Assembly: GCF_006345805.1 (NCBI RefSeq)
Contig: NC_042997.1
Location: 35,402,001-35,466,000, forward strand
Reading direction: 5' to 3'
Length of the DNA: 64,000 nucleotides
Source: Octopus sinensis
Taxonomy: Eukaryota
The notes beneath the pieces are model-generated. The model worked only from the letters and a program-made list of their open reading frames with translations. It was not told where the DNA came from and searched no databases. A program made the translations under genes and the position numbers. This document shows positions 2,646 to 55,660 of this stretch, piece by piece; the first letter of the stretch is position 1, and each line of letters begins with the position of its first letter.

Positions 2646-2991
2646 AATATATAAGCATAAGATCCAAGGATCGTACAAAAAATTAAAAACAACTTTCAGG
2701 GACAATAGCGGTTTACTGAAACGTAAGGTTGTGGATGTTTCATATCGAAGTATCTTAAACTGAAAGAAGTTGTTTTTATACTACTCGGTAGGCGACCAGG
2801 TTTGCTGGGTATGTGAATGAGAATACAAGTTAAGGGAAGGTGAATATGAGATCCGGACTACATCGGTTTCATAATGAGCAGAACCTCAGAAGTGTTAAAT
2901 ATCCATTCCTTAATACTTATATATATATATATATATATATATACAGGCATATATATCTATATCTATTTATCTATAAATCTATAAATCTATG

Positions 2992-3024
<33 letters not shown>

Positions 3025-3188
3025 TATAATTATATCGTGTTGCATATTTGCCATTTGAATATGGCTAACCCATAAGGGTGGATGCTACTGTAGTTTGTAG
3101 CCCCAGGAAGATATCTCCTCCAGTTGGCTATAGACACACTATCTGTGTCCTGTCAGTATCTGTGAAGGGGAGTCGTCCTCCCCGTCTT

Positions 3189-3258
3189 CAACACATGATA
3201 CACACGTACCCGAGTTTCAAGGTGTTTACCTTTCATCAGCGTGTGACAATCATGGTTG
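3189..3258 (-). ncRNA. Type I hammerhead ribozyme, intact core (unit 1)
   Basis: Minus strand: CACACG-CTGATGA(3239-3233)-AAGGT/AAAC/ACCTT-GAAA-C/TCGG/G-TA^-CGTGTG. Stem I is 6 bp, extended by CATGAT/ATCATG; stem II is 5 bp; GUA cleavage predicted between 3207 and 3206. Confidence 0.85.
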
Positions 3259-3541
3259 TCGACGAGAAGTCAGATCCCTTCACAAATACATATACTTTTT
3301 CCAGTGTCGATTTCACACTGATAATGTAAAAGTGAAATCAAACAATGATAAATCTCAGAGCGAGTTATAAACAGTAGCGGTAACACTTCCTGTTGCATAT
3401 TTGCCATTTGAATATGGCTAACCCATAAGGGTGGATGCTACTGTAGTTTGTAGCCCCAGGAAGATATCTCCTCCAGTTGGCTATAGACACACTATCTGTG
3501 TCCTGTCAGTATCTGTGAAGGGGAGTCATCCTCCCCGTCTT

Positions 3542-3611
3542 CAACACATGATACACACGTACCCGAGTTTCAAGGTGTTTACCTTTCATCAGCGTGTGAC
3601 AATCATGGTTG
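3542..3611 (-). ncRNA. Type I hammerhead ribozyme, intact core (unit 2)
   Basis: Identical to the unit-1 ribozyme at +353; cleavage predicted between 3560 and 3559. Confidence 0.85.
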
Positions 3612-3690
3612 TCGACGAGAAGTCAGATCCCTTCACAAATACATACGACACTGGAAAAAGTATATGTATTTGTGAAGGGATCTGACTTCA

Positions 3691-3760
3691 CAACCATGAT
3701 TGTCACACGCTGATTAAAGGTAAACACCTTGAAACTCGGGTACGTGTGTATCATGTGTTG
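3691..3760 (+). ncRNA. Type I hammerhead ribozyme with G8U core mutation (probably inactive)
   Basis: Same helices, but the core reads CTGATTA (3710-3716; T at 3715); GTA triplet at 3740-3742. Confidence 0.75.
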
Positions 3761-4037
3761 AAGACGGGGAGGATGACTCCCCTTCACATATACTGACAGG
3801 ACACAGATAGTGTGTCTATAGCCAACTGGAGGAGATATCTTCCTGGGGCTACAAACTACAGTAGCATCCACCCTTATGGGTTAGCCATATTCAAATGGCA
3901 AATATGCAACACGAAGTGTTACCGCTACTGTTTATAACTCGCTCTGAGATTTATCATTGTTATATATATATATATACACACATATATATATATATACATA
4001 CACATATACATATATACATACATATATACTTACAAAA

Positions 4038-4226
4038 TGTGACCGTGTGTGTACCGTTGGCGATATTTTTTCCTCCATCTTCTCCTATGTTTCTGACAAA
4101 GATCTCCGCTCGAAACGTTAAACCCTCCTTCTTTCCTTCGTTGCTGAGCGTTCAATAATACTATATTTGTTCCACGTCCTCGCGTTGTTGTGTTTTTTTT
4201 GTGCTTTCATGTTTGGATTAACTTTA
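4038..4226 (+). mobile_element. Penelope-like terminal repeat fragment with a degenerate minimal hammerhead (4087-4123)
   Basis: GTTT-CTGACAA-AGATCTCCGCTC-GAAACGTT-AAAC. Homologous copies at 24030-24233 and 54011-54090. PLE assignment rests on the HHR-like motif (inference). Confidence 0.55.
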
Positions 4227-4649
4227 TATATATATATACATGCATACATACATACATACATACATACATACATACATACATACATACATACATACATACA
4301 TACACACACACATATATATATATATATGTATGTGTATGTGTATGTATGTATATAATACAAAAATGGGACAAGAACGCAAAACATCCATACAGTTAAGTGA
4401 TACAAAAAGGACAAAATACATACAGACAAACGATACACGGAAGACAACGATGGGTCATTCGGAGTTTTCTATCCTCAATTGTGTTTCAGATTATATTTGC
4501 AATTTCGGCTGATTATAATCGAGATTGCTCTAATGTGGCCAGCTCCAAGGAACAAATAAGCTAAGAGCATTAGATTCGTTACAAGAAAGTAGCGAATTTA
4601 TACGGAAGGACGGAAATACAAAACAAAAACCCAGTGAAATGTTATACAA

Positions 4650-5400
4650 ATGTGTGGTCGAGCATTGTCCTGATGAAGCATAACTCTTTTTCGATTCACT
4701 GAAGCGGTTTATTTTCGTTAAAGCTAGGTTCAAACGTTCTAATTGCTGACAGTAGACTTGAGCATTGATTGTTGCATTAGGTGGTAATAATTCAAAGTGA
4801 ATTACACCTTTGCAATCCCACCAGATACAGAGAAGATCATTTTTGCCATGAAGTTTCCTTCTCGGTTGTGGTTGAGTTTTTTTTCCCTTTTACCAAGCCA
4901 CTCTTTACATTTAACATTTCCATAGAAGATCTATTTTTCGTCACCAGTCACATGTCTATCCAAAAAGGGTGAAATTATTTCGCGAAAATGGAGAGAAGAG
5001 CAGATGTCAAATTGGGATTTCTGGTTGCTTTCGGACAATTCATGAGGCACCCATTTTCCAAGCTTAGGAACCTTTCCAAGTTGTTGAAGATGACAATGAA
5101 CAGTTGTAAGGTTTGAACTAAGCTTTATTGCCAATTCTTCAACTGATAAAGCAGGATTTTCTTCAAGTAATGCCTCAGAGAACTTATCATCAAATCTTCA
5201 TTTTCAAGGCTGAAATTTGGCAAAACATATTCTGCAAATTCTTTCAATCAAGCATTCTTTCCCTTCAACTGAGCGTATGTTTCAATTCGCTTCGGCTGCA
5301 GCATTATATGCCTTAAATGATCTCCGGATAGTTCAATTTTAGCAAGTGTTTAGTCAAGCAAATGTTAATTATATTGTTCTGTAAAATAATATTTGATTAG
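4650..5400 (-). pseudogene. Mariner transposase relic (N-terminal to second catalytic Asp)
   Basis: WVPHEL and VTGDEK in ORF 4931-5134; LHQDNARPH at ~4655-4680; stops and frameshifts. Confidence 0.85.
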
Positions 5401-16230: not shown

Positions 16231-18065
16231 TCATTTAAAAAAATATTTTTGCACAGGCATTGCACGATAACAACATTGATTAAGCTTCATGCAATGGCGA
16301 TACTCGATAACGAGGGGGCAGCCATCATGCATTTATATACGTATATGTGTGTATGTATGTATTTATGTATGTATGTATGTATATAGACATATACAAAGGA
16401 TGAAGATACGAGCTACTAATAGTTTCTAACTTTGGAGACGTAGGTTTAAACCGGAGTTTTAACCTGAAGTAATCTTCAGGTTGATGGTCTATTCAATTTC
16501 GCCAGTTCAGAGCGCTGCTACAAGAGAAATCACGGGGGGAAAAAAAAACAAGAAATAGATAAATGCAAAAAAGTTGGTGGGTGAATAAACAGGTAAAAAG
16601 TAAGGACTGAAAGGAAAAGAAAAGAAAGAATATGAGGATTATGTTCCCTTTGACCCTACAGTTTTAATTATGCTGGCTGTTCTAGAATAATTCAACGGTG
16701 AGCGATCATAAGCCTGCGAGACATCTGTGCAGACCGAAAAGACCAGTAAGCAAAAATTTATATGCAGGTCAACAACTCAGGATCTAACACTCACATGCAC
16801 AAACACACACACGCACAAACACGTGTGTGTGTGTGTGTGTGTGTGTTTATGTATGTATAAAAATTCTTAAGGTGGTTATTAGCAATTTAAAATCTGTGAC
16901 GGAGTAATGGGTGTCTAATAAAGATTAATCAAATCTGAAATCAGTATTGATATGACTCACTTGCTGAAAACCACAGATTTTCACTTATACACATTAATGG
17001 AAACCGGGGGAATAAGCAGAAATTCTAAGCCCCGGTACCAATAACGAAGAAAATCGTAAATTGAAAATAGATTGAGAGATAGATAGATACATAGATAGAT
17101 AGATAGATAGGAATTTATAGGCTAATATAACTGCACATATAACTGTATCCTTTTTAATTAAAAAAATTTTCCAGACACAGAAGTAGTGTGGTCAAGTTTT
17201 GAGAATTTAGCATAAAAATCCTGGTATATCCGATTCTCAAGTTTTGGTAAAATTGAATATGTTTAGGAAAGAACGAAATTTGTGTAGCTGGCAACAACAT
17301 GGGAGTTCGTCACGTAAATCATAAATGTAATTCAAAGATCTAATTTTATGCCCGCTTCTATCTGATTCCTTTCGCTGATTACTTTAGGCTTGCTCCTCTC
17401 TTGCGAATACGCAACCACTTTATAAGTTTTATCAATAAGGTAATAACTGAAATAGCAGAACAATTAAAATCTCATGACTGGAAATTGTGGATGAGATCCA
17501 TTAATTATGCATGATTTTAAGTAAAACCCCAAGATGGAAGGATGTTCCGTCATAAAAAATTCGGCGCTTAAAGCCTCTGGCAATTTAAATTTAGTTATGT
17601 TTGCTGCTAGTTGAACGACTTCAAGCATGTAATTGTAGTACGGGGTTAATACAAAGTCTGATGAGTTTATACGTTGTTGGACAATTTGGTTTCTGGCCTG
17701 AATCTCTATTGGTTAAGACGATCAACGATCCTTCGACCAACAAAGTGCCGCTCGTAACAGACACGAGATACCTGAACGTCAATCCAGCGTTACATAGTAC
17801 GGTGTAAATGTACGCCTTTCATTTATATGTCCAACTCATATATACGAGCTCAATGGATAGGAGCATTATACAATGAATTTTCATGCTCAAAGGTCGCTGG
17901 TAAACAAGCTCACGACTTTACGATCATGAACCGAGTAATATAAATATTAAAAAACGGGCCTTCTGCGTAATGCTAGATTACAAATTTCTGGGACGCAATA
18001 TGAAGGTGGGCAGTTAGTGGCACTGGCTGGTATATATACATACATATATATATATATATATATAT

Positions 18066-18469
18066 GTAGGTCCCGGGTTGATTCGGGGTTAACCACAGTA
18101 AATAGGGTACTCAATACATAGCAGAGTAAAATTAATTTATTATATAGAAGGAGCTTCTACAGGACTAGAACTGTTTCATTCAAGAGAAATCTTCAGGAAG
18201 CTAGTTAACAAGAATTGTATTGGCATTTATACATTTAGGCAGGTTTAAAGGGGTGTTGGTGGGGGACTTTTTTGGGGGTAGGCATAGCGCAAAAAATCAT
18301 ACTTGGGGGAGTGGTCAAGGGGTCAGTGTTAAATTAGATAGGAGAATAAATAAAAAATAAAAAATAAATAAAAAATAAAAAATAAAATAAAAAATAAAAA
18401 ATAAAAAATAAAAAATAAAAAATAAAAAATAAAAATATAAAAAAAATAAAAATAAAAATAAAAAATATA

Positions 18470-19395: not shown

Positions 19396-20595
19396 TCCTT
19401 AAAAATCCTTAAAAATGTTTTAGCCCGAAGGCCGCGGCCATGCTGGGGCAACACCGCTGAAGAGCCACACTAGTTTGTGAATCCACCTCTGATACGTGGC
19501 ACTTGATCAACAAGGGAGTTCGATGCTGCTGCCCGCATCCGCGTCTCTGTCGTGGAGGTAGGTTCATCTGGGACTTCCAACAAGAAGAGATCCAGTTTAG
19601 TTTTAAAGAAACCCACATCCACCCATGTAAGTCTCTCAGGCATTTAGGGAGGATGTTGAAAAGCTGTGGTCCTCTGAACCCAAGCTGTTGCAGTATCTGA
19701 CCTGTATTTTGATGGTGATGTTGGAATCCTTGGCACCACGCAGCGGCGCCCCGTTCTGCGGTTGGAGTAACTTTGAATGCCAAAGTTTGGTATAAGACCC
19801 TCCAGGATTTCCAGATTATATATTACTGCATATCCTCCGCCTCCGCTCCAGGGAGAAGAGGTTTAATAACCTTCAGTCTTTCCAGTAGCTGACATTTTGC
19901 ATTGAGACGATTTTCTTTGTGTAGCTTTCTGAGTTGCTTCGAGTTCTGCTGTTTGTTTATATTGTGTGGTGACAAAGTGGGAGCAGCAGTAGTAAGCGAC
20001 TGAGGACAAATGTTTTCCATAGGACCATCAGTGTCTCCTTCTCTCTTGTTCTGAAAGTTCGGAGAATCCATCCAGCTAGCCGTCTGCATTTTATCACCAG
20101 ATTAGCAATATGCATTTGAAAGATGCATCATTGCTATGTCAATGCCCAGGTCACGCACTGATTTTGACAGGGGGATTGCAATTCTTCCTGGGCCAGTGTA
20201 TCCAGTCTTCACGTCATTTACCTTTGTGTGCCAGTAGCGCAGGGCTGGAACTTACCTGCATTAAAATGCATGTTGTTGTCCTCAGCCCACCTGTATATTG
20301 TGTCCAGCTCATGTTGCAGATGCGCAATATTTTCAGGGTTCTGTATTGCGTGGGAGACCTTTGTGTCATCTGCATAGCTAGCAGGGTGGTCATCGTAGCA
20401 ACTGAAGGCATGTCTGAAAGGGCCACTATGAACATCAGTGGCCCCAAGACAGTGCCCTGTGGACACCGCTTGTTATTTGCGTTTCCCTGGAGGTGGCTCC
20501 ATTGCTCACAACTGCCTGTTTTCTGTCTTTTAGGAAGTTGTGCAGCCACTCTCCAAGTTTTCCGCCTATGCCGAGACCACGCAGTTTATGACAGA
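19396..20595 (-). mobile_element. 5'-truncated CR1-clade LINE (RT C-terminal half and 3' UTR), degenerate
   Basis: PQGTVLGPLMF, SYADDTKV..HLQHELDTIYRWAEDNNMHFNAGKF, GPQLFNILPKCLR; tail ends in tandem TTTTTAAGGA. Confidence 0.85.
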
Positions 20596-21646: not shown

Positions 21647-21962
21647 TTTTTATTTTTATTTTTATTTTTTTTATATTTTTTATTTTTTATTTTTTATTTT
21701 TTATTTTTTATTTTTTATTTTTATTTTTGATTTATTTTTTATTTTTTATTTCTTCTCCTATCTAATTAACACTGACCCCTGACCCCTCCCCCAAGTATGA
21801 TTTTTTGCGCATGCCTACCCCCAAAAAAGTCCCCCACCAACACCCCTTTAAACCTGCCTAAAGGTATAAATGCCAATACAATTCTGTGTTAACTAGCTTC
21901 CTGAAGATTTCTCTTGAATGAAACAGTTCTAGTCCTGTAGAAGCGCCTTCTATATCATAAAT
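21565..21962 (+). mobile_element. Inverted copy of the PLE-like repeat at 18135-18540
   Basis: Reverse-complement match with scattered 1-nt indels. Confidence 0.6.
21895..21944 (+). ncRNA. Type I hammerhead ribozyme (second family)
   Basis: GCTTC-CTGAAGA(21901-21907)-TTTCTCTTGAAT-GAAA-CAG..CTG-TA^(21939)-GAAGC. Confidence 0.6.
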
Positions 21963-21991
21963 ATAATATTATATATATATATATATATATA

Positions 21992-22031
<40 letters not shown>

Positions 22032-22055
22032 TACCTATATATATATTTTTTTTTC

Positions 22056-24029: not shown

Positions 24030-24233
24030 GTGACCTCGTGTGTACTGTTGGCGATTTTTTTCCTCTGTCTTCCCTTCTCTGGATCATTCCTTCTCTTATG
24101 TTTTCGACGAAGAGCTCCGCTCGAAACGTTGGACATCCTTCTTTCCTTTTTTCCTGAGCGTCCAATGATACTATATTTGTTCCACGTCCTCGCGTTGTTG
24201 TGTTTTTTGGGCTTTCTTGTTTGGATTAACTAT
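24030..24233 (+). mobile_element. PLE-like terminal repeat with a degenerate minimal hammerhead (24098-24136)
   Basis: ATGTTT-TCGACGA-A-GAGC/TCC/GCTC-GAAACGTT-GGACAT; homologous to 4038-4226. Confidence 0.55.
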
Positions 24234-24285
24234 ATATTTATATATGTATGTATGTATTTGTGTATTTTATATATATATATATATA

Positions 24286-29963: not shown

Positions 29964-30039
29964 CTATCTATGTTATCTATCTATCTATCTACTTATCTAT
30001 CTATGTGTTATCTAACTATCCATATCCATATGTGTCTCA

Positions 30040-30345
30040 AGAAAGGAATACGAAAAGCTTTCCCAGTCTAAAGATCTGCAAATTGAAATCACCAAAAAGT
30101 GGAAGCTTACTACTGTGACAATACCAGTAGTAATTGGTGCGTTGGGAATGATAAAGAAGGGAGCTGAGAAGTGTATTAAGCAACTCCCTCGTAATTCCAA
30201 TCTCCGTTATCAACGAAAGATAACCTTGATGGGTTCATCCTATATATTACTAGGGAAAGCACTCTCCATCTAAAATAGAACAAATTTTAACATGCATAGC
30301 AAAACAAAAGCCTCCGAGCGATGCCCTGTACTAAGTTATAATGAA
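30040..30345 (+). mobile_element. R4/Dong-like LINE 3' fragment (RLE C-terminus)
   Basis: KDLQIEITKKWKLTTVTIPVVIGALGMIKKG; followed by (TAA)n. Confidence 0.7.
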
Positions 30346-30363
30346 AGGTAACTATAAATAATA

Positions 30364-30417
<54 letters not shown>

Positions 30418-30430
30418 TAATAATAATAAT

Positions 30431-31085
30431 AAGTATAAATTAAGACATGACAGAGTTGGCCAATATCTCCACTGGCTAATAAGTCGGCATTACAATATCA
30501 AAACTGCCGAGAAGTGGTATAATCACCACCCTGAGGCTGTAACTGAAGGAGAAAATGTGACCATTCTGTGGGACTTTCCAGTACATACAGACCGAACCAT
30601 CAAGGCCAATAAACCAGATATTGTTGTGAAAGACCAAAACAATAAAGTTTGCTTATTGATCGACATGAGCATCCCCTGTGATCATAATATCTCAGCGAAA
30701 GAGTTTGACAAGCTCAGAAAATATAAAGACCTACTCATTGAAATTGAGAAAATGTGGCATCTCAAGGCGGTTACAATACCAGTGATCGTAGGAGCACTAG
30801 GAATGATCAAGAAGGGAACCGAAAATTATATGAGAATGATCCCTGGCTTACCATCCCTGCAAGAAGTGCAAGAGATTGTCTTAACTGGTACATCACACGT
30901 ATTGAGAAGAGCATTGTCGATGTGAGAACTGTTGCTGCTCATGTATTTTAATTTAACTAAAGAAAAAAAAAATTAACGAACTATTGAGTTTGGTTTAATG
31001 GCCTACCAATGTATACTATGAGTTTCTTTGCCCTAGGGGTCGGGAAGACACTCGGCAAGAAATGGAAGCAAATTTGAAAGAAGAA
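30431..31085 (+). mobile_element. 5'-truncated R4/Dong-like LINE with open restriction-like endonuclease (RLE) domain
   Basis: Open frame 30431-30925: RHDRVGQYLHW..TILWDFPVHTDRTIKANKPDIVVKD..LIDMSIP..KEFDKLRKYKDL..IPVIVGALG; (TAA)n on both sides. Confidence 0.85.
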
Positions 31086-45354: not shown

Positions 45355-45753
45355 TCTTTATATATAAAAGAGAGGTTGTGTGTCTGTCTCCTACGATTTA
45401 GATTCCTAACTACTCCCACATTTTGCGGTGCAGTTTAACCAAAACCGGGTATCTTATAATCGTGATTCATATCGAGCCCTTCTGGGTATTAGCGCGCGTC
45501 TACGACGAGTCTACGATTTCAGAAAAAATTACCATAATTTTTTTTCCATTTTAATGCCTTTTTTCGCTATTATATAAGGGAAGTAACTCTATTATAAAAA
45601 TGTCTACGATGAGTCAACGATTTAAAAAAAAATTACAATCATTTTTTTCCATTTTTAATGCATCTTTTTGCTATTTTTTGGCTATAACTCTCTAAAAAGG
45701 CTTATATAGTTATTTCCCTTACAAACCCGAGTAACGCCGGGCGATACTGCTAG
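45355..45753 (+). mobile_element. Non-autonomous Helitron
   Basis: A|TC start, subterminal hairpin CCCG..CGGG (45726-45741), CTAG|T end, no TSD; second copy at 54183. Confidence 0.85.
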
Positions 45754-45884
45754 TTTATTCTAAAATCTTCAACAACTGAATTTTGCACGCTATTATAACA
45801 ATGATACTAAAATAAACGCTGCACTTGTTCTATTAGTTGACTTACGTACCGTGAAATATTACATATTTCGTACATAGTAATTTT

Positions 45885-51574: not shown

Positions 51575-51928
51575 TATTCAGTAGTTTTATTTTTATAACG
51601 TGCTTTCACTTCACTACCGAGCGCAGCTCTGTGTGTCTTGGGTATGTGCTGTGGTTTGTTGTGATGCTCTCATGGTTACTGTATTGAGTGTGTTTTGCGT
51701 AGGATGTGTGCGGTGCCTAGTAGTGCAATTTTCTGTATGTTATATATAATTGTAAGTCCTGGTGTTTTTGTTATGTAATTGTCTGAATATTTCTTATCGT
51801 ACCTAATGCGCCTACTATGATAGGAATTGTTTCTGTTTTTAGATTCCACATTCGAGTTACCTCTATTTCCAGGTCTTTGTGTTTTGGAATTTTCTCCATT
51901 TCTTTTAGAGAAAAGTTGTCATCTGCTG

Positions 51929-51930
<2 letters not shown>
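51575..51930 (-). mobile_element. R4/Dong-like LINE 3' fragment
   Basis: KEMEKIPKHKDLEIEVTRMWNLKTETIPIIVGALG in ORF 51771-52004; abuts (ATT)n. Confidence 0.8.
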
Positions 51931-51988
<58 letters not shown>

Positions 51989-52074
51989 GCACACACATAT
52001 ACAATGTATTGGGAGCTTTGTGGAAATCACGGTCTACAAGGAGGAAAGACGTTGTAAGTCACGGAGAATGAAAA

Positions 52075-53463: not shown

Positions 53464-54010
53464 AGGTGTTATAAATTTAACTTATTTTGGCATTACTTCA
53501 AGTTCCTTAGAAGCAGAGCACGAGACAACTCAGATTTTACGGTTCAGAATAATGAGACGTATAAAGCACTTCTGTGTGAGATAATTTTAGGGCCTTCTCG
53601 TTTCATTCTTAGATCACGTGCGGAAATTAGTTACATAACTTTAAGAGATACTCCTCGTTGCGATTCCACGTCATGCAATACTTAAGGTCTTATAGTTTGT
53701 GATTATTAGGTTACTTAGCGATGTCGTTTAGAAATGGAATTAATAATTGGCATTCCGAATAATGTGGATAGTATACTTTAGGTGTCACTCTACTTATCAA
53801 TATGATAACAACATGTCATGGTCACATGATAATTCTTAATCTGGTTATTGTAAGGTTGATGCATTTCTGCTCCATATCATCATTGGTAGCGAGTACTTGT
53901 AGTTAGAAGTGGAATAATCACATTATGTGTTCATTATACTGAAATTGTGCATAGATATTATCAAGTTCATAAAGAGTTTTTTGTTTTCTTTCTGTTATAT
54001 ATATATATAT

Positions 54011-54090
54011 GAGCGTCCAATAATACTATATTTGTTCCACGTCCTCGCGTTGTTGTGCTTTTTTGTGCTTTCTTGTTTGGATTAACTTTA
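54011..54090 (+). mobile_element. 3' fragment of the PLE-like repeat family at 4038 and 24030
   Basis: GAGCGTCCAATAATACTATATTTGTTCCACGTCCTCGCGTTGTTGTG..TTTGGATTAAC. Confidence 0.65.
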
Positions 54091-54101
54091 ATTAACTATA
54101 T

Positions 54102-54182
<81 letters not shown>

Positions 54183-54185
<3 letters not shown>

Positions 54186-54577
54186 TTATATATAAAAGTA
54201 AGGTTGTGTGATGTCTGTCTCCTACGATTTAGATTCCTAACTACTCCCACATTTTGCGGTGCAGTTTAACCAAAACCGGGTATCTTATAGTCGTGATTCA
54301 TATCGAGCCTTTCTGGGTATTAGCGCGCGTCTACGATGAGTCTACGATTTAAAAAAAAATTACCATCAATTTTTCCGATTTTTAATGTATTTTTGGCATA
54401 TATAAAGGACGTAACTCTCTAAAAATTTATTATTAAATCTAAGAACGTAAAAAGCTACAGTAACACCCCCCCTTTGTGGTTAGCCATATTGAGATGGCTA
54501 TTAAACTTTACATCTCTAAAAATGCTTATATAGTTATTTCCCTTACCACCCCGAGCAACGCCGGGCGATACTGCTAG
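54183..54577 (+). mobile_element. Non-autonomous Helitron (second copy)
   Basis: A|TC start, CCCGAGCAACGCCGGG hairpin, CTAG|T end; first ~170 bp nearly identical to the copy at 45355. Confidence 0.85.
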
Positions 54578-55163
54578 TATACTTATAATATGATATAGGA
54601 ATTCTCCTTTAGTTTGCTATTGCAGACATGTGGAAGTATAGTTTTCTTGGAAGTTAGCAGAGCAAAGGAAAATAGAAAGTCTCCCTCGTTGGTTCTCTTC
54701 ATTAGTTATATATTTTTGACACGCACCAATTCAAAGCTTTAACAGGTTTAATTAAAGGGACAAAGGCATTTCAGGTGTGATCATCTTCCAGGTTTACTTG
54801 CATATTTGCACCTACGTGAAAATATATGCAGTGCAAATATATGCTTGTGAATATAATACATACATTCATACGTGTTTGTATGCGTGTGTGTGTGTGTCTG
54901 TGCGCATGTGTATATGCCTATGTACCATGACACTATTATACTCTAATTAAGCATGCAGGTCATTTTAAAGTGGATTTTAAGCAGATCCAGGACACTAAGC
55001 CTATACGTTGTTTACTGTACTTTGCTATAGAAAGACTGTCAACTCAGATTTGAATTTTTTATGTCTTCAAAAATGTTGGTTTCTATAGTTATTTCAAGTC
55101 TCAGAATCGAAGTTTATAAACTTAAAATATATTACACAACTTCAAATGTAACGCCAATAGTGT

Positions 55164-55204
<41 letters not shown>

Positions 55205-55343
55205 ATAATAATAATAATAATAATAATATAATAATAATAATAATAATAATAATTATTATTATTATTGTTATTATTATTATTATATTATTATTATTATTAT
55301 TATTATTATTAGTAGTAGTAGTAGTAGTAGTATTTTTATTATT

Positions 55344-55660
55344 ATGAAAGAAAGAGAAAATGTTTATAAATATAGCGACCTCAGAACTGAGATCGCTAAG
55401 ATGTGGCAGCTACGAGGGTCGAACGTAAAGGTTATCCCTATTGTCATCGGAGCATTCGGTTCAGTCCCACCAAATCTGAAAAAAAAACGTTTGAATAACT
55501 TAGAGATACCCTACAATCTATATGTATTGCGAACGTCGACATTACTTGGAATTACACGCATATTGCGTAAAGTACTGCCTGTCTGAGTTCCCTGTGATGA
55601 CTTGACAAACAGGACAAACTTCCAGTAAACACACCATCTTCAATGAACAACCTCATGATA
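55344..55660 (+). mobile_element. R4/Dong-like LINE 3' fragment
   Basis: KYSDLRTEIAKMW..VIPIVIGAFG..LLGITRILRKVL; preceded by (TAA)/(ATT)n. Confidence 0.75.

What the first reader, a model, noticed from the sequence alone, without database searches (positions are those of the whole stretch)
3035..3645. Candidate non-LTR retrozyme: 353-bp tandem units each carrying an intact type I hammerhead
Seen: a 353-bp unit repeated head-to-tail (2 mismatches in ~258 bp of overlap). Each unit has, on the minus strand, all canonical HHR core nucleotides (CUGAUGA, GAAA, GUA), a 6-bp stem I extended past a bulge, a 5-bp stem II, and a 2-bp stem III with a near-palindromic C-UCGG-G cap. Established: animal non-LTR retrozymes are tandem repeats of a few hundred bp with one type I HHR per unit and yield self-cleaved monomers and circRNAs. 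Inference: a minus-strand transcript cut at 3560/3559 and 3207/3206 releases an exact 353-nt monomer (3559->3207) that could circularise and be retro-copied by another element's RT. The unit has further hairpins (GCCAT/ATGGC at 3050-3065, GCTAC/GTAGC, GGGAG/CTCCC). I do not know whether this family has been described in cephalopods.
Basis: partly seen in the sequence, partly recalled or inferred. Interest (0 to 1): 0.9.

Follow-up and report, generated by a model that had tools for sequence, protein, structure and literature searches.

The report
Hammerhead-ribozyme retroelement insertion in a (TA)n microsatellite
This is a real but ordinary piece of selfish DNA: one 927-bp insertion of a small non-coding "retrozyme"-type repeat carrying self-cleaving hammerhead ribozyme motifs, whose tandem-plus-inverted layout inside a (TA)n tract looks like the footprint of a Penelope-like retrotransposon's integration machinery.

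Summary
Window 3035-3292 and 3388-3645 repeat at a 353-bp period with 2 mismatches. Each copy carries, on the minus strand, a complete type I hammerhead (HHR) core with helices of 6+6, 5 and 2 bp. Cleavage would fall at 3560/3559 and 3207/3206.

It is inverted (3646-3961, 99%) and its ribozyme is dead (G8->U).

No Rfam hammerhead model matches, and TRF does not call the 1.73-copy repeat. However, a covariance model built only from four published, experimentally tested retrozyme HHRs ranks the two sites first in the window (23.9 bits). The 353-nt monomer folds with z = -7.9.

The layout is a 5'-truncated copy, a full copy, and a head-to-head inverted 5'-truncated copy whose 3' end lies 47 nt further on, all in AT-rich target DNA. 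This matches published insertion signatures of Penelope-like elements (PLEs).

Best reading: one PLE-type integration of a non-LTR-retrozyme-class element. It is a new member of a known kind. Copy number, expression and cleavage could not be tested. Interest is modest (0.33, not 0.9).

The parts
2918..3034 (.). Left (TA)n-rich microsatellite. It is the target DNA abutting the 3' end of the minus-strand (sense) arm.
   Evidence: TRF period 2, 2918-3028; junction ...aattata|TCGTGTTGC read directly
3035..3645 (-). Left arm, 611 nt, with the sense strand on the minus strand. Reading 5'->3' it is a 5'-truncated copy (258 nt) followed by a full 353-nt copy that ends ...GCAACACGA-3'.
   Evidence: Direct repeat of 258 nt, 99%, period 353; BLAST map of the unit; three-way alignment
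3547..3607 (-). Upstream intact type I hammerhead, including the extended helix I. Its core spans 3598->3554. Predicted cleavage is between 3560 and 3559.
   Evidence: Descriptor hit; model R1 23.9 bits, E about 1.5e-4, all pairs standard
3194..3254 (-). Downstream intact type I hammerhead. Its core spans 3245->3201. Predicted cleavage is between 3207 and 3206.
   Evidence: Descriptor hit; model R1 23.9 bits
3207..3559 (-). Predicted 353-nt monomer RNA released by double self-cleavage (5'-CGUGUG...GGGUA-3').
   Evidence: MFE -128.4 kcal/mol, z = -7.86 vs 100 shuffles. The circular fold is -123.4 kcal/mol with 66% of bases paired, and the ends pair as helix I. GC content is 42%.
3646..3961 (+). 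Right arm, 316 nt: an inverted copy whose sense strand is the plus strand. It is 5'-truncated and joined head-to-head to the left arm at 3645/3646.
   Evidence: Inverted repeat arms 3341-3612 / 3690-3961, 272 nt, 99%; plus 3266-3309 / 3646-3689, 100%; alignment
3704..3748 (+). Inactivated hammerhead in the inverted copy. It reads CUGAUUA (G8->U at 3715). A 6-nt deletion (tcgtcg) lies just upstream, between 3689 and 3690.
   Evidence: Alignment; model R1 score drops to 18.4 bits
3646..3662 (+). 17-nt stretch at the centre (cgacactggaaaaagta). It is present only in the right arm and forms the loop of the ~300-bp inverted repeat.
   Evidence: Read directly
3915..3961 (+). 47-nt 3' extension of the right arm beyond the point where the left arm ends. 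It is a candidate PLE-type 'tail', meaning a second reverse-transcription start site.
   Evidence: The left-arm end point maps to offset 269 of 316 in the right arm. End point A lies in the loop of the hairpin AACAC-GAA-GUGUU.
3962..4028 (.). Right (TA)n-rich microsatellite. It is the target DNA abutting the 3' end of the plus-strand arm.
   Evidence: TRF 3961-4028; junction ...ATCATTGTT|atatatat

Best explanation
Window 3035-3961 is one insertion of a short, non-coding, hammerhead-bearing retroelement with a 353-nt unit. It belongs to the animal 'non-LTR retrozyme' class, which current literature regards as non-autonomous dependants or derivatives of Penelope-like elements (PLEs).

Shown:
- Two sense copies lie on the minus strand, a 258-nt 5'-truncated copy followed by a full 353-nt copy.
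- One inverted 5'-truncated copy lies on the plus strand, joined head-to-head.
- Both 3' ends abut (TA)n, and the two 3' ends sit at unit positions 47 nt apart.
- There are two intact canonical-architecture type I hammerheads and one dead one.
- The monomer is compact and self-paired.

Inferred:
- A PLE endonuclease and reverse transcriptase acting in trans cut both strands of an AT-rich (TA)n target.
- Both 3'-OH ends primed cDNA synthesis on a multimeric or circular element RNA, starting at two neighbouring internal sites. This produced the outward-facing arms, the >1-unit tandem and the 47-nt 'tail'.
- A minus-strand transcript that starts inside the left arm could pair its two ribozymes as a double hammerhead (8-bp intermolecular helix III). 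[quoted passage not shown] A host tRNA ligase could then circularise it.
- A transcript that reads through from the inverted copy would instead form a ~300-bp dsRNA hairpin that buries the upstream ribozyme. Such a hairpin is more likely a substrate for RNAi or editing.
For: Repeat anatomy.

Hammerhead:
- All invariant core positions and a type I topology are present. Helix sizes are I = 6 bp plus a loop plus 6 bp, II = 4-5 bp, III = 2 bp plus a near-palindromic tetraloop. These equal the published 'canonical metazoan HHR' description (PMC4209133; sequence).
- The descriptor finds only these sites in the window and about 1 hit per 30 Mb in random sequence.
- Model R1 was built only from the coral Amil224, mussel Mg353 and axolotl Ax353/Ax330 ribozymes (supplement of PMC7229834). 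It ranks the two sites first of 128 kb searched, at 23.9 bits. Decoys carrying the same sequence boxes reach at most 17.4 bits.
- The validated Ax353 ribozyme also cleaves at GUA and has a non-G-C 10.1/11.1 position.

Retrozyme-like RNA:
- Monomer z = -7.86, with the ends paired as helix I.
- GC content is 42%.
- There is no coding capacity or protein homologue.
- The double-hammerhead helix III is 8 bp, -10.9 kcal/mol.

PLE-type integration:
- Craig et al. 2021 describe partial tandems, an inverted 5'-truncated copy adjacent at the 5' end, a 30-40-bp tail at one end, and (TA)n as the preferred target of several PLE clades. They also report non-autonomous PLEs that make head-to-tail multicopy insertions (PMC8557442).
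- Frangieh et al. 2024 show that a purified PLE protein cleaves and extends both DNA strands, prefers AT-rich DNA, and starts reverse transcription at two adjacent internal sites in an AC-rich stem-loop. The tail is the stretch between those sites (PMC11167929).
- Here end point A lies in the loop of AACAC-GAA-GUGUU and end point B lies 47 nt downstream.
- Only about 4% of the window is in perfect (TA)>=6 tracts.
- The flanks beyond the (TA)n are unique, so the inversion is confined to the element.
Against: - No Rfam hammerhead family matches, even at E<=10 on an 86-nt slice.
- The 10.1-11.1 pair is A-U, whereas G-C is 'highly conserved' (PMC4209133).
- The isolated motif's minimum-free-energy fold pairs the CUGA box with the UCGG loop. 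That fold is -21.2 kcal/mol against -14.2 for the hammerhead secondary structure.
- The three copies are almost identical, so there is no covariation evidence.
- This is the only locus of the family in 64 kb.
- No other copy could be retrieved from any collection, so multicopy status and mobility are not shown.
- No PLE ORF lies in the window.
- The 'tail' is 47 nt, against the published 30-40 bp.
- (TA)n is self-complementary, so target-site duplications cannot be read.
- The source organism is not proven. The nearest named TE protein is from Octopus sinensis at 72%.
Confidence: 0.66

Rival explanations
1. The unit is the pseudo-LTR of an autonomous Penelope-like element. On this reading the locus is an ORF-less (internally deleted or heavily 5'-truncated) PLE insertion, not a member of an independent non-autonomous retrozyme family.
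For: The tandem/inverted/tail/(TA)n architecture is that of PLEs themselves (PMC8557442). Most PLE insertions are 5'-truncated and keep only terminal sequence. Retrozyme consensus sequences match PLE pLTRs in Xenopus.
Against: The full repeat period is only 353 nt and has no ORF remnant. The ribozyme is the 'canonical' type, with a 6-bp helix I, a 4-5-bp helix II and a helix III with a tetraloop. Cervera and de la Pena assign that type to retrozymes. They describe metazoan PLE pLTRs as carrying minimal variants with a long helix II and little or no helix III. No PLE RT or GIY-YIG relic lies in the window.
Confidence: 0.17
2. The layout arose at the DNA level. A pre-existing single copy, or a satellite monomer, was duplicated and inverted locally by replication slippage, fold-back repair or unequal exchange promoted by the flanking (TA)n. 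No retrotransposition event created it.
For: (TA)n tracts are fragile and recombinogenic, and the window is full of them. The copies differ by only 3 substitutions and 1 indel. Satellite expansion by unequal crossover is the accepted route for long retrozyme arrays.
Against: The inversion breakpoints coincide with the element's ends, and the unique flanks are not inverted. The two arms end at different unit positions, one of them in the loop of an AC-rich hairpin. A second, unrelated hammerhead-like repeat in the same window shows the same outward-facing pair ending in (TA)n. That points to a shared insertion mechanism.
Confidence: 0.1
3. The hammerhead is a chance look-alike or a dead relic with no catalytic activity. 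On this reading the locus is just an inverted/tandem repeat whose main output, if transcribed, is a long hairpin RNA feeding small-RNA or A-to-I editing pathways.
For: There is no Rfam hit. The 10.1-11.1 pair is A-U. An alternative fold is favoured for the single motif. The whole 927-nt transcript folds as a hairpin of about -695 kcal/mol, and Rfam miRNA-precursor models score on it for that reason alone. A Gb-sized genome would hold tens of chance descriptor hits.
Against: The probability that a given 353-bp unit carries a full descriptor match by chance is about 1e-5. The model from validated ribozymes scores 6.5 bits above box-only decoys. Helix dimensions, the helix I internal loop and the self-complementary helix III follow the published family rules. 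Two of the three copies keep the motif perfectly intact.
Confidence: 0.07

Closest known systems
Animal non-LTR retrozymes (Cervera & de la Pena 2020, PMC7229834), especially mussel Mg353 and axolotl Ax353
   Same: - Type I hammerhead with a 6-bp helix I, a 4-5-bp helix II and a 2-bp helix III capped by a (near-)palindromic tetraloop.
- GUA cleavage triplet, as in Ax353.
- Unit size in the 170-400 nt range (353 nt).
- Low GC content, no ORF, LTR, PBS or PPT.
- Monomer predicted to be highly self-paired.
- Two same-strand ribozymes delimit the monomer.
   Different: - Only 1.73 units plus an inverted copy, rather than dimer-to-multimer arrays.
- A10.1-U11.1 base pair.
- No sequence similarity to published units outside the core.
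- Expression, circularity and copy number are unknown.
- I found no report of the class in cephalopods, the probable host lineage.
Penelope-like element insertions (pLTR / inverted copy / tail; Craig et al. 2021 PMC8557442; Frangieh et al. 2024 PMC11167929)
   Same: - A full copy is preceded by a 5'-truncated copy.
- An inverted 5'-truncated copy abuts the 5' end.
- One end carries an extra short extension.
- The target is a (TA)n / AT-rich tract.
- The hammerhead lies in the repeated part.
- The architecture is explicable by extension of both cleaved DNA strands from two internal RNA start sites.
   Different: - No RT/GIY-YIG ORF.
- The unit is 353 nt, not 2-4 kb.
- The ribozyme is the canonical type, not the minimal PLE type.
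- The extension is 47 nt rather than 30-40 bp.
Hammerhead-bearing satellite/SINE-like repeats: newt satellite 2 and Schistosoma Sm-alpha
   Same: These are short non-coding repeats with one type I hammerhead per unit and a weak helix III. They are thought to work as double hammerheads in multimeric transcripts (Forster et al. 1988, as cited in PMC4209133; Sm-alpha as a non-autonomous retrotransposon, PMC6155905).
   Different: Those families occur as very abundant arrays or dispersed copies with demonstrated transcripts and cleavage. Here a single locus is seen and nothing functional has been tested.
Twin priming inversions of LINE-1 (Ostertag & Kazazian 2001; from my own knowledge, not checked here)
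   Same: There are head-to-head arms with both 3' ends facing outward. This is explained by both target-site 3'-OH ends priming cDNA synthesis on the element RNA.
   Different: In L1 the two arms are different, non-overlapping parts of one linear RNA. Here both arms contain the same unit, which implies a multimeric or circular template or two RNA molecules. The likely enzyme is a PLE, not L1.

Membership tests
Hammerhead ribozyme, type I (canonical metazoan form) | Conserved core: C3-U4-G5-A6-N7-G8-A9, G12-A13-A14, A15.1-U16.1, H17, and a paired 1.1-2.1 | tested here: met
   CUGAUGA / GAAA / A..U / A17 / C1.1-G2.1 are present in both minus-strand copies. The inverted copy has G8->U.
Hammerhead ribozyme, type I (canonical metazoan form) | Three helices in type I topology. 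Helix I is ~6 bp followed by loop 1, helix II is ~4 bp plus loop 2, and helix III is 1-2 bp with a small palindromic loop (PMC4209133). | tested here: met
   Helix I is 6 bp, then a 3/1 internal loop, then 6 bp. Helix II is 5 bp with an AAAC loop (or 4 bp with a 6-nt loop). Helix III is A-U and C-G with a UCGG loop. ACUCGGGU is fully self-complementary when G-U pairs are allowed.
Hammerhead ribozyme, type I (canonical metazoan form) | G10.1-C11.1 base pair ('highly conserved') | tested here: not met
   The pair is A10.1-U11.1, so pairing is kept. The validated axolotl Ax353 ribozyme also departs here, with U.U, so this is a deviation and not an exclusion.
Hammerhead ribozyme, type I (canonical metazoan form) | Match to the curated Rfam hammerhead covariance models | tested here: not met
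   There was no hammerhead family at the gathering score on the window. There was none at E<=10 on 2900-4050 or on 3185-3270.
Hammerhead ribozyme, type I (canonical metazoan form) | Match to a structure-plus-sequence model of experimentally validated animal retrozyme hammerheads | tested here: met
   Model R1 was built from 4 published ribozymes with the candidate excluded. It gives 23.9 bits, E about 1.5e-4, ranks 1 and 2 in the window, full length, all pairs standard. Box-only decoys reach at most 17.4 bits. The model is small and its E-values are rough.
Hammerhead ribozyme, type I (canonical metazoan form) | Compensatory base changes supporting the helices | tested here: inconclusive
   The three copies are identical in the motif except for G8->U. 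No other family members could be retrieved.
Hammerhead ribozyme, type I (canonical metazoan form) | Mg2+-dependent self-cleavage 3' of H17 | not testable with these tools
   This needs in vitro transcription of monomeric and dimeric constructs.
Non-LTR retrozyme (animal) | At least two complete same-strand type I hammerheads in consecutive units a few hundred nt apart | tested here: met
   The cleavage sites are 353 nt apart on the minus strand.
Non-LTR retrozyme (animal) | Lies in a tandem repeat as called by TRF (operational first filter of Li et al. 2026) | tested here: not met
   The 1.73 copies are not reported by TRF with the default settings or with the paper's parameters. The repeat itself is unambiguous.
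Non-LTR retrozyme (animal) | Non-coding, no LTR/PBS/PPT, low GC (<45-50%), unit 170-400 nt | tested here: met
   The longest open frame is 86 codons and has no homologue. GC content is 42% and the unit is 353 nt.
Non-LTR retrozyme (animal) | Monomer RNA highly self-paired | tested here: met
   MFE is -128.4 kcal/mol with z = -7.86. The circular fold has 66% of bases paired.
Non-LTR retrozyme (animal) | Multicopy family dispersed in the genome; co-resident autonomous PLEs | not testable with these tools
There is one locus in the window. Literature reports Penelope elements in Octopus vulgaris (PMC13282606), but the organism of the window is only inferred.
Non-LTR retrozyme (animal) | Expressed as linear and circular monomer RNAs | not testable with these tools
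   This needs RNA-seq, northern blots or divergent-primer RT-PCR.
Penelope-like element (autonomous) | ORF with a telomerase-like RT and a GIY-YIG endonuclease | tested here: not met
   There is no such ORF in or near the insertion or anywhere in the window. The only RT relic is LINE-like (YADD, weak RVT_1) at 19.4-20.6 kb.
Penelope-like element (insertion signature only) | Partial tandem, plus an inverted 5'-truncated copy at the 5' end, plus an extension at one end, in a (TA)n / AT-rich target | tested here: met
   See for the anatomy, and for the published signature. The extension is 47 nt against the published 30-40 bp.

The most novel reading that the evidence does not exclude
This locus is a nearly undecayed fossil of a single two-strand, two-start-site target-primed reverse transcription event. 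In it, a (TA)n-targeting Penelope-like element copied a multimeric or circular retrozyme RNA. That would make it insertion-site-level evidence, from an invertebrate (probably an octopod, a lineage with no reported retrozymes), that non-LTR retrozymes are integrated by PLE machinery. It would also show that an A10.1-U11.1 hammerhead variant is a working ribozyme.
Probability: 0.35. Interest if true: 0.5.

Novelty: new member of a known kind. Interest (0 to 1): 0.33.

Why it matters
If the family proves multicopy and expressed, it would add cephalopods to the animals that make small ribozyme-processed circular RNAs.

Its compound insertion structure would also give concrete, sequence-level support to a proposal that so far rests mainly on co-occurrence and phylogeny in vertebrates. 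That proposal is that non-LTR retrozymes ride on Penelope-like element machinery. The relevant features here are outward-facing arms, two 3' end points 47 nt apart, and a (TA)n target.

There is also a practical lesson. Neither Rfam's hammerhead models nor a TRF-first pipeline detects this locus, so surveys built on them will undercount such elements.

None of this changes the known picture of what retrozymes are.

Tried and rejected
- Rfam at the gathering score and at E<=10 on three slices gave no hammerhead family. The only hits were miRNA-precursor models, which score because of the long inverted repeat and the (TA)n tracts. I rejected these as artefacts.
- TRF, with default settings and with the published survey's parameters, does not report the 353-bp period.
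- A hammerhead-anchored pattern scan found 17 loci in JGI metagenome contigs and 1 in IMG/VR. All lack helices I and II and come from unrelated GC-rich contigs, so they are chance matches. I reused them as decoys.
- An exact 45-mer scan of 185,579 prokaryotic genomes found nothing.
- I used the open frames that cross the unit as handles to reach public assemblies, one of 83 aa (antisense) and one of 45 aa (sense). Neither had any homologue.
- A TE ORF from the window (30428-30922) has many relatives on ENA contigs. The contigs I fetched (L019, L020) are from other genomes and hold no copy of the unit.
- A literature search for the ribozyme sequence string found nothing.
- I considered an assembly or palindromic-read artefact and rejected it. 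The arms differ by substitutions and an indel, end at different unit positions, and continue into different unique flanks.
- I considered a protein-coding reading of the 86-codon frame and rejected it, because it has no homologues and lies antisense to the ribozyme.
Full report
**What is in the sequence**

Window 3035-3292 and 3388-3645 are 258 nt long, 99% identical and 353 bp apart. The two mismatches are at 3037/3390 and 3176/3529.

On the minus strand each copy reads CACACG-CUGAUGA-AAGGU-AAAC-ACCUU-GAAA-C-UCGG-G-UA|CGUGUG.
- Every invariant hammerhead position is present.
- Helix I is 6 bp, then a 3/1-nt internal loop, then six more pairs (CAUGAU/AUCAUG).
- Helix II is 5 bp and helix III is 2 bp with a UCGG loop.
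- Cleavage after A17 falls between 3560/3559 and 3207/3206, so the intervening RNA (3559->3207) is exactly 353 nt.

Window 3646-3961 is an inverted copy of the same unit. Its arms, 3341-3612 and 3690-3961, are 272 nt long and 99% complementary, and 3266-3309 pairs with 3646-3689 at 100%. The inverted copy carries CUGAUUA (G8->U at 3715) and a 6-nt deletion beside helix I. The whole 927-bp block lies between two (TA)n tracts, 2918-3034 and 3962-4028.

**Anatomy in the ribozyme's sense orientation**
- The left arm is window 3645->3035 on the minus strand, 611 nt. It consists of a 258-nt 5'-truncated copy followed by a full 353-nt copy ending ...GCAACACGA-3', then (TA)n.
- The right arm is 3646->3961 on the plus strand, 316 nt. 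It is a 5'-truncated copy that starts 17 nt further upstream than the left arm. It runs 47 nt further at its 3' end (...ATCATTGTT-3'), then meets (TA)n.
- The two arms meet head-to-head at 3645/3646 and point outward.
- The unique flanks beyond the (TA)n are not inverted copies of each other.
- Among the three copies there are only three substitutions and one indel, so the structure is young or was made in one event.

**Is the hammerhead more than chance?**
- A descriptor requiring the core plus helices I >= 5, II >= 4 and III >= 2 pairs finds exactly these two sites in the window. It found 2 hits in 59.5 Mb of first-order-Markov sequence scanned on both strands. That is about one per 30 Mb, or roughly 1e-5 for any particular 353-bp unit. 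A Gb-sized genome would still contain tens of chance hits.
- Rfam gave no hammerhead match at the gathering score or at E <= 10, even on an 86-nt slice. I report that as a failed test.
- For an independent test I took the four experimentally validated retrozyme ribozymes printed in the supplement of Cervera & de la Pena 2020: coral Amil224, mussel Mg353, and axolotl Ax353 and Ax330. I aligned them without the candidate, annotated the canonical type I structure and built a covariance model.
- Searched with filters off, that model ranks the two sites first and second in the window at 23.9 bits, E about 1.5e-4. The alignment is full-length and every pair is standard. The mutated inverted copy comes third at 18.4 bits.
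- As a control I used seventeen unrelated metagenome loci that had been selected to carry the same sequence boxes (CTGATGA...GAAACTCGGGTAC) but no helices. They reach at most 17.4 bits. The helices therefore contribute about 6.5 bits.
- The helix dimensions match the published description of canonical metazoan type I hammerheads: helix I 6 bp, helix II 4 bp, and helix III 1-2 bp with a small palindromic loop (PMC4209133).
- The mussel ribozyme has the same C-tetraloop-G helix III, and Ax353 has the same GUA triplet.
- The one real deviation is A10.1-U11.1 in place of the 'highly conserved' G-C pair. The active Ax353 ribozyme has a U.U mismatch there, so this position tolerates change.

**RNA properties**
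- The 353-nt monomer folds to -128.4 kcal/mol, against -89 +/- 5 for shuffles (z = -7.86). Its two ends pair as helix I and the helix II hairpin is kept. As a circle it reaches -123.4 kcal/mol with 66% of bases paired. GC content is 42%.
- The isolated motif prefers a fold in which the CUGA box pairs with the UCGG loop. That fold is -21.2 kcal/mol, against -14.2 for the hammerhead secondary structure.
- Two copies can form an 8-bp intermolecular helix III of -10.9 kcal/mol. This is the classical double-hammerhead situation described for newt, axolotl and PLE ribozymes.
- A transcript that reads through the whole insertion would instead fold into a ~300-bp hairpin of about -695 kcal/mol that buries the upstream ribozyme. 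This hairpin also explains the spurious miRNA-precursor matches in Rfam.

**How the locus was most likely made**

The layout matches what Craig et al. 2021 describe for Penelope-like element insertions (PMC8557442):
- partial tandems in which a full copy is preceded by a truncated one;
- a 30-40-bp 'tail' at one end;
- (TA)n as a preferred target for the clades with the linker Zn-finger;
- non-autonomous derivatives that make head-to-tail multicopy insertions.

Frangieh et al. 2024 supply a mechanism (PMC11167929). A purified PLE protein cleaves and extends both DNA strands and prefers AT-rich DNA. It starts reverse transcription at two adjacent internal RNA sites in an AC-rich stem-loop, and the tail is the stretch between the two start sites.

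In this locus the two arms end at two unit positions 47 nt apart. The upstream end point lies in the loop of the hairpin AACAC-GAA-GUGUU. About 4% of the window is in perfect (TA)>=6 tracts, so landing in one is not the default.

I therefore infer a single PLE-type integration of a multimeric or circular RNA of this 353-nt element. This step is inference from architecture. No PLE ORF is present in the window.

**Classification**

The locus meets these sequence-level criteria of Cervera & de la Pena's animal non-LTR retrozymes (PMC7229834):
- two same-strand canonical type I hammerheads a few hundred nt apart;
- a non-coding, low-GC unit of 170-400 nt;
- a self-paired monomer.

It fails the TRF-first filter of the 2026 survey because it has only 1.73 copies. 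Multicopy status, expression, circularity and cleavage could not be tested.

[quoted passage not shown] The idea is therefore not new. What this locus adds is an insertion-site picture consistent with it.

**Organism and novelty**
- The window is 33% GC and extremely microsatellite-rich.
- Among named proteins, the one nearest to a TE ORF of the window is from Octopus sinensis (72%). The next named one, a cnidarian protein, is at 59%.
- In the searchable literature I found no report of retrozymes or hammerheads in cephalopods and no printed copy of this ribozyme sequence.
- Octopus genomes are reported to contain Penelope elements (PMC13282606).

**What could not be done**

No other copy of the unit could be retrieved. 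Pattern scans of metagenome, viral and prokaryotic collections gave only chance hits or nothing. Two protein-handle searches using frames across the unit found nothing. ENA contigs reached through a TE protein belong to other genomes.

The rival reading that the unit is simply the pseudo-LTR of an autonomous PLE therefore cannot be excluded. The canonical, rather than minimal, ribozyme type and the 353-nt ORF-less period argue against it.

**Verdict**

This is a genuine hammerhead-bearing retroelement insertion of the retrozyme/PLE-dependent kind. It is probably a new family member in an unreported host lineage, with an instructive insertion architecture. It is not a new kind of system, and no function has been demonstrated.

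Noticed in passing
window 18127-18350 (-) and 21749-21971 (+); motif at 18202->18152 and 21896-21944: A second, unrelated hammerhead-like motif: AGCUUC-CUGAAGA-UUUC.UCUU.GAAU-GAAA-CAG..CUG-UA|GAAGCU. Helix I is 6 bp, helix II is U.U plus 3 bp, and helix III is 4 bp. It sits in a 225-bp inverted repeat (95-96%). The two copies point away from each other and run into (TA)n at 18031-18065 and 21951-22046. This is the same outward-facing layout as the main locus, but the copies are separated by 3.4 kb of microsatellites and a LINE relic. Model R1 gives 18.1 and 16.1 bits, which is within the range of box-only decoys, and Rfam finds nothing. It is only a candidate.
   Followed up: partly
window 54200-54590 and 45373-45766: A repeat family (79% between the two copies) shares a 47-nt module (81%) with the 353-nt unit. 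The module includes the conserved hairpin TAGCCAT...ATGGC. The 54.2-kb copy begins directly after a (TA)n tract (54118-54194). This may be a shared module between non-autonomous elements, or a coincidence of a mobile hairpin.
   Followed up: partly
window 30365-30922 (+), 30016-30270 (+), 55227-55583 (+), 51679-52058 (-): Several copies of the C-terminal region of a retrotransposon protein (motifs KPDIV...D, IPVVIGALG) each lie next to an (AAT)n/(ATT)n microsatellite (TRF 30357-30432, 55252-55345, 51931-51986). There is no Pfam hit. There are 190 homologues, the nearest named one from Octopus sinensis. This looks like a microsatellite-targeting LINE. Dong/R4-like is my guess and was not tested.
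   Followed up: partly
window 4533-5197 (-): A mariner-type transposase relic (Pfam Transposase_1, E = 3e-19) lies about 600 bp to the right of the insertion.
   Followed up: partly
window 4039-4229, 24030-24237, 54010-54090: The sequence immediately to the right of the insertion's (TA)n tract belongs to another repeat family (79-95% between copies). Each copy is followed by a microsatellite. The neighbourhood is a mosaic of microsatellite-associated repeats.
   Followed up: no
window 19412-20585 (-): This is a decayed LINE-type reverse transcriptase (..GPLMF.., SYADDTKV; weak RVT_1 hits below the Pfam cut-off). It is not Penelope-like.
   Followed up: partly
window 3554-3746 and 3618-3690 (Rfam hits): Rfam miRNA-precursor models (MIR9481, mir-3149, MIR2600 and others) score 35-43 bits here, far below their gathering scores. 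They do so only because the head-to-head copies form a long perfect hairpin. mir-297 hits fall on the (TA)n/(CA)n tracts. All of these are artefacts.
   Followed up: yes
whole window: Microsatellite density is extreme: 119 TRF rows and 101 perfect (TA)>=6 tracts in 64 kb, with a GC content of 33%. This provides abundant targets for microsatellite-specific retroelements.
   Followed up: no
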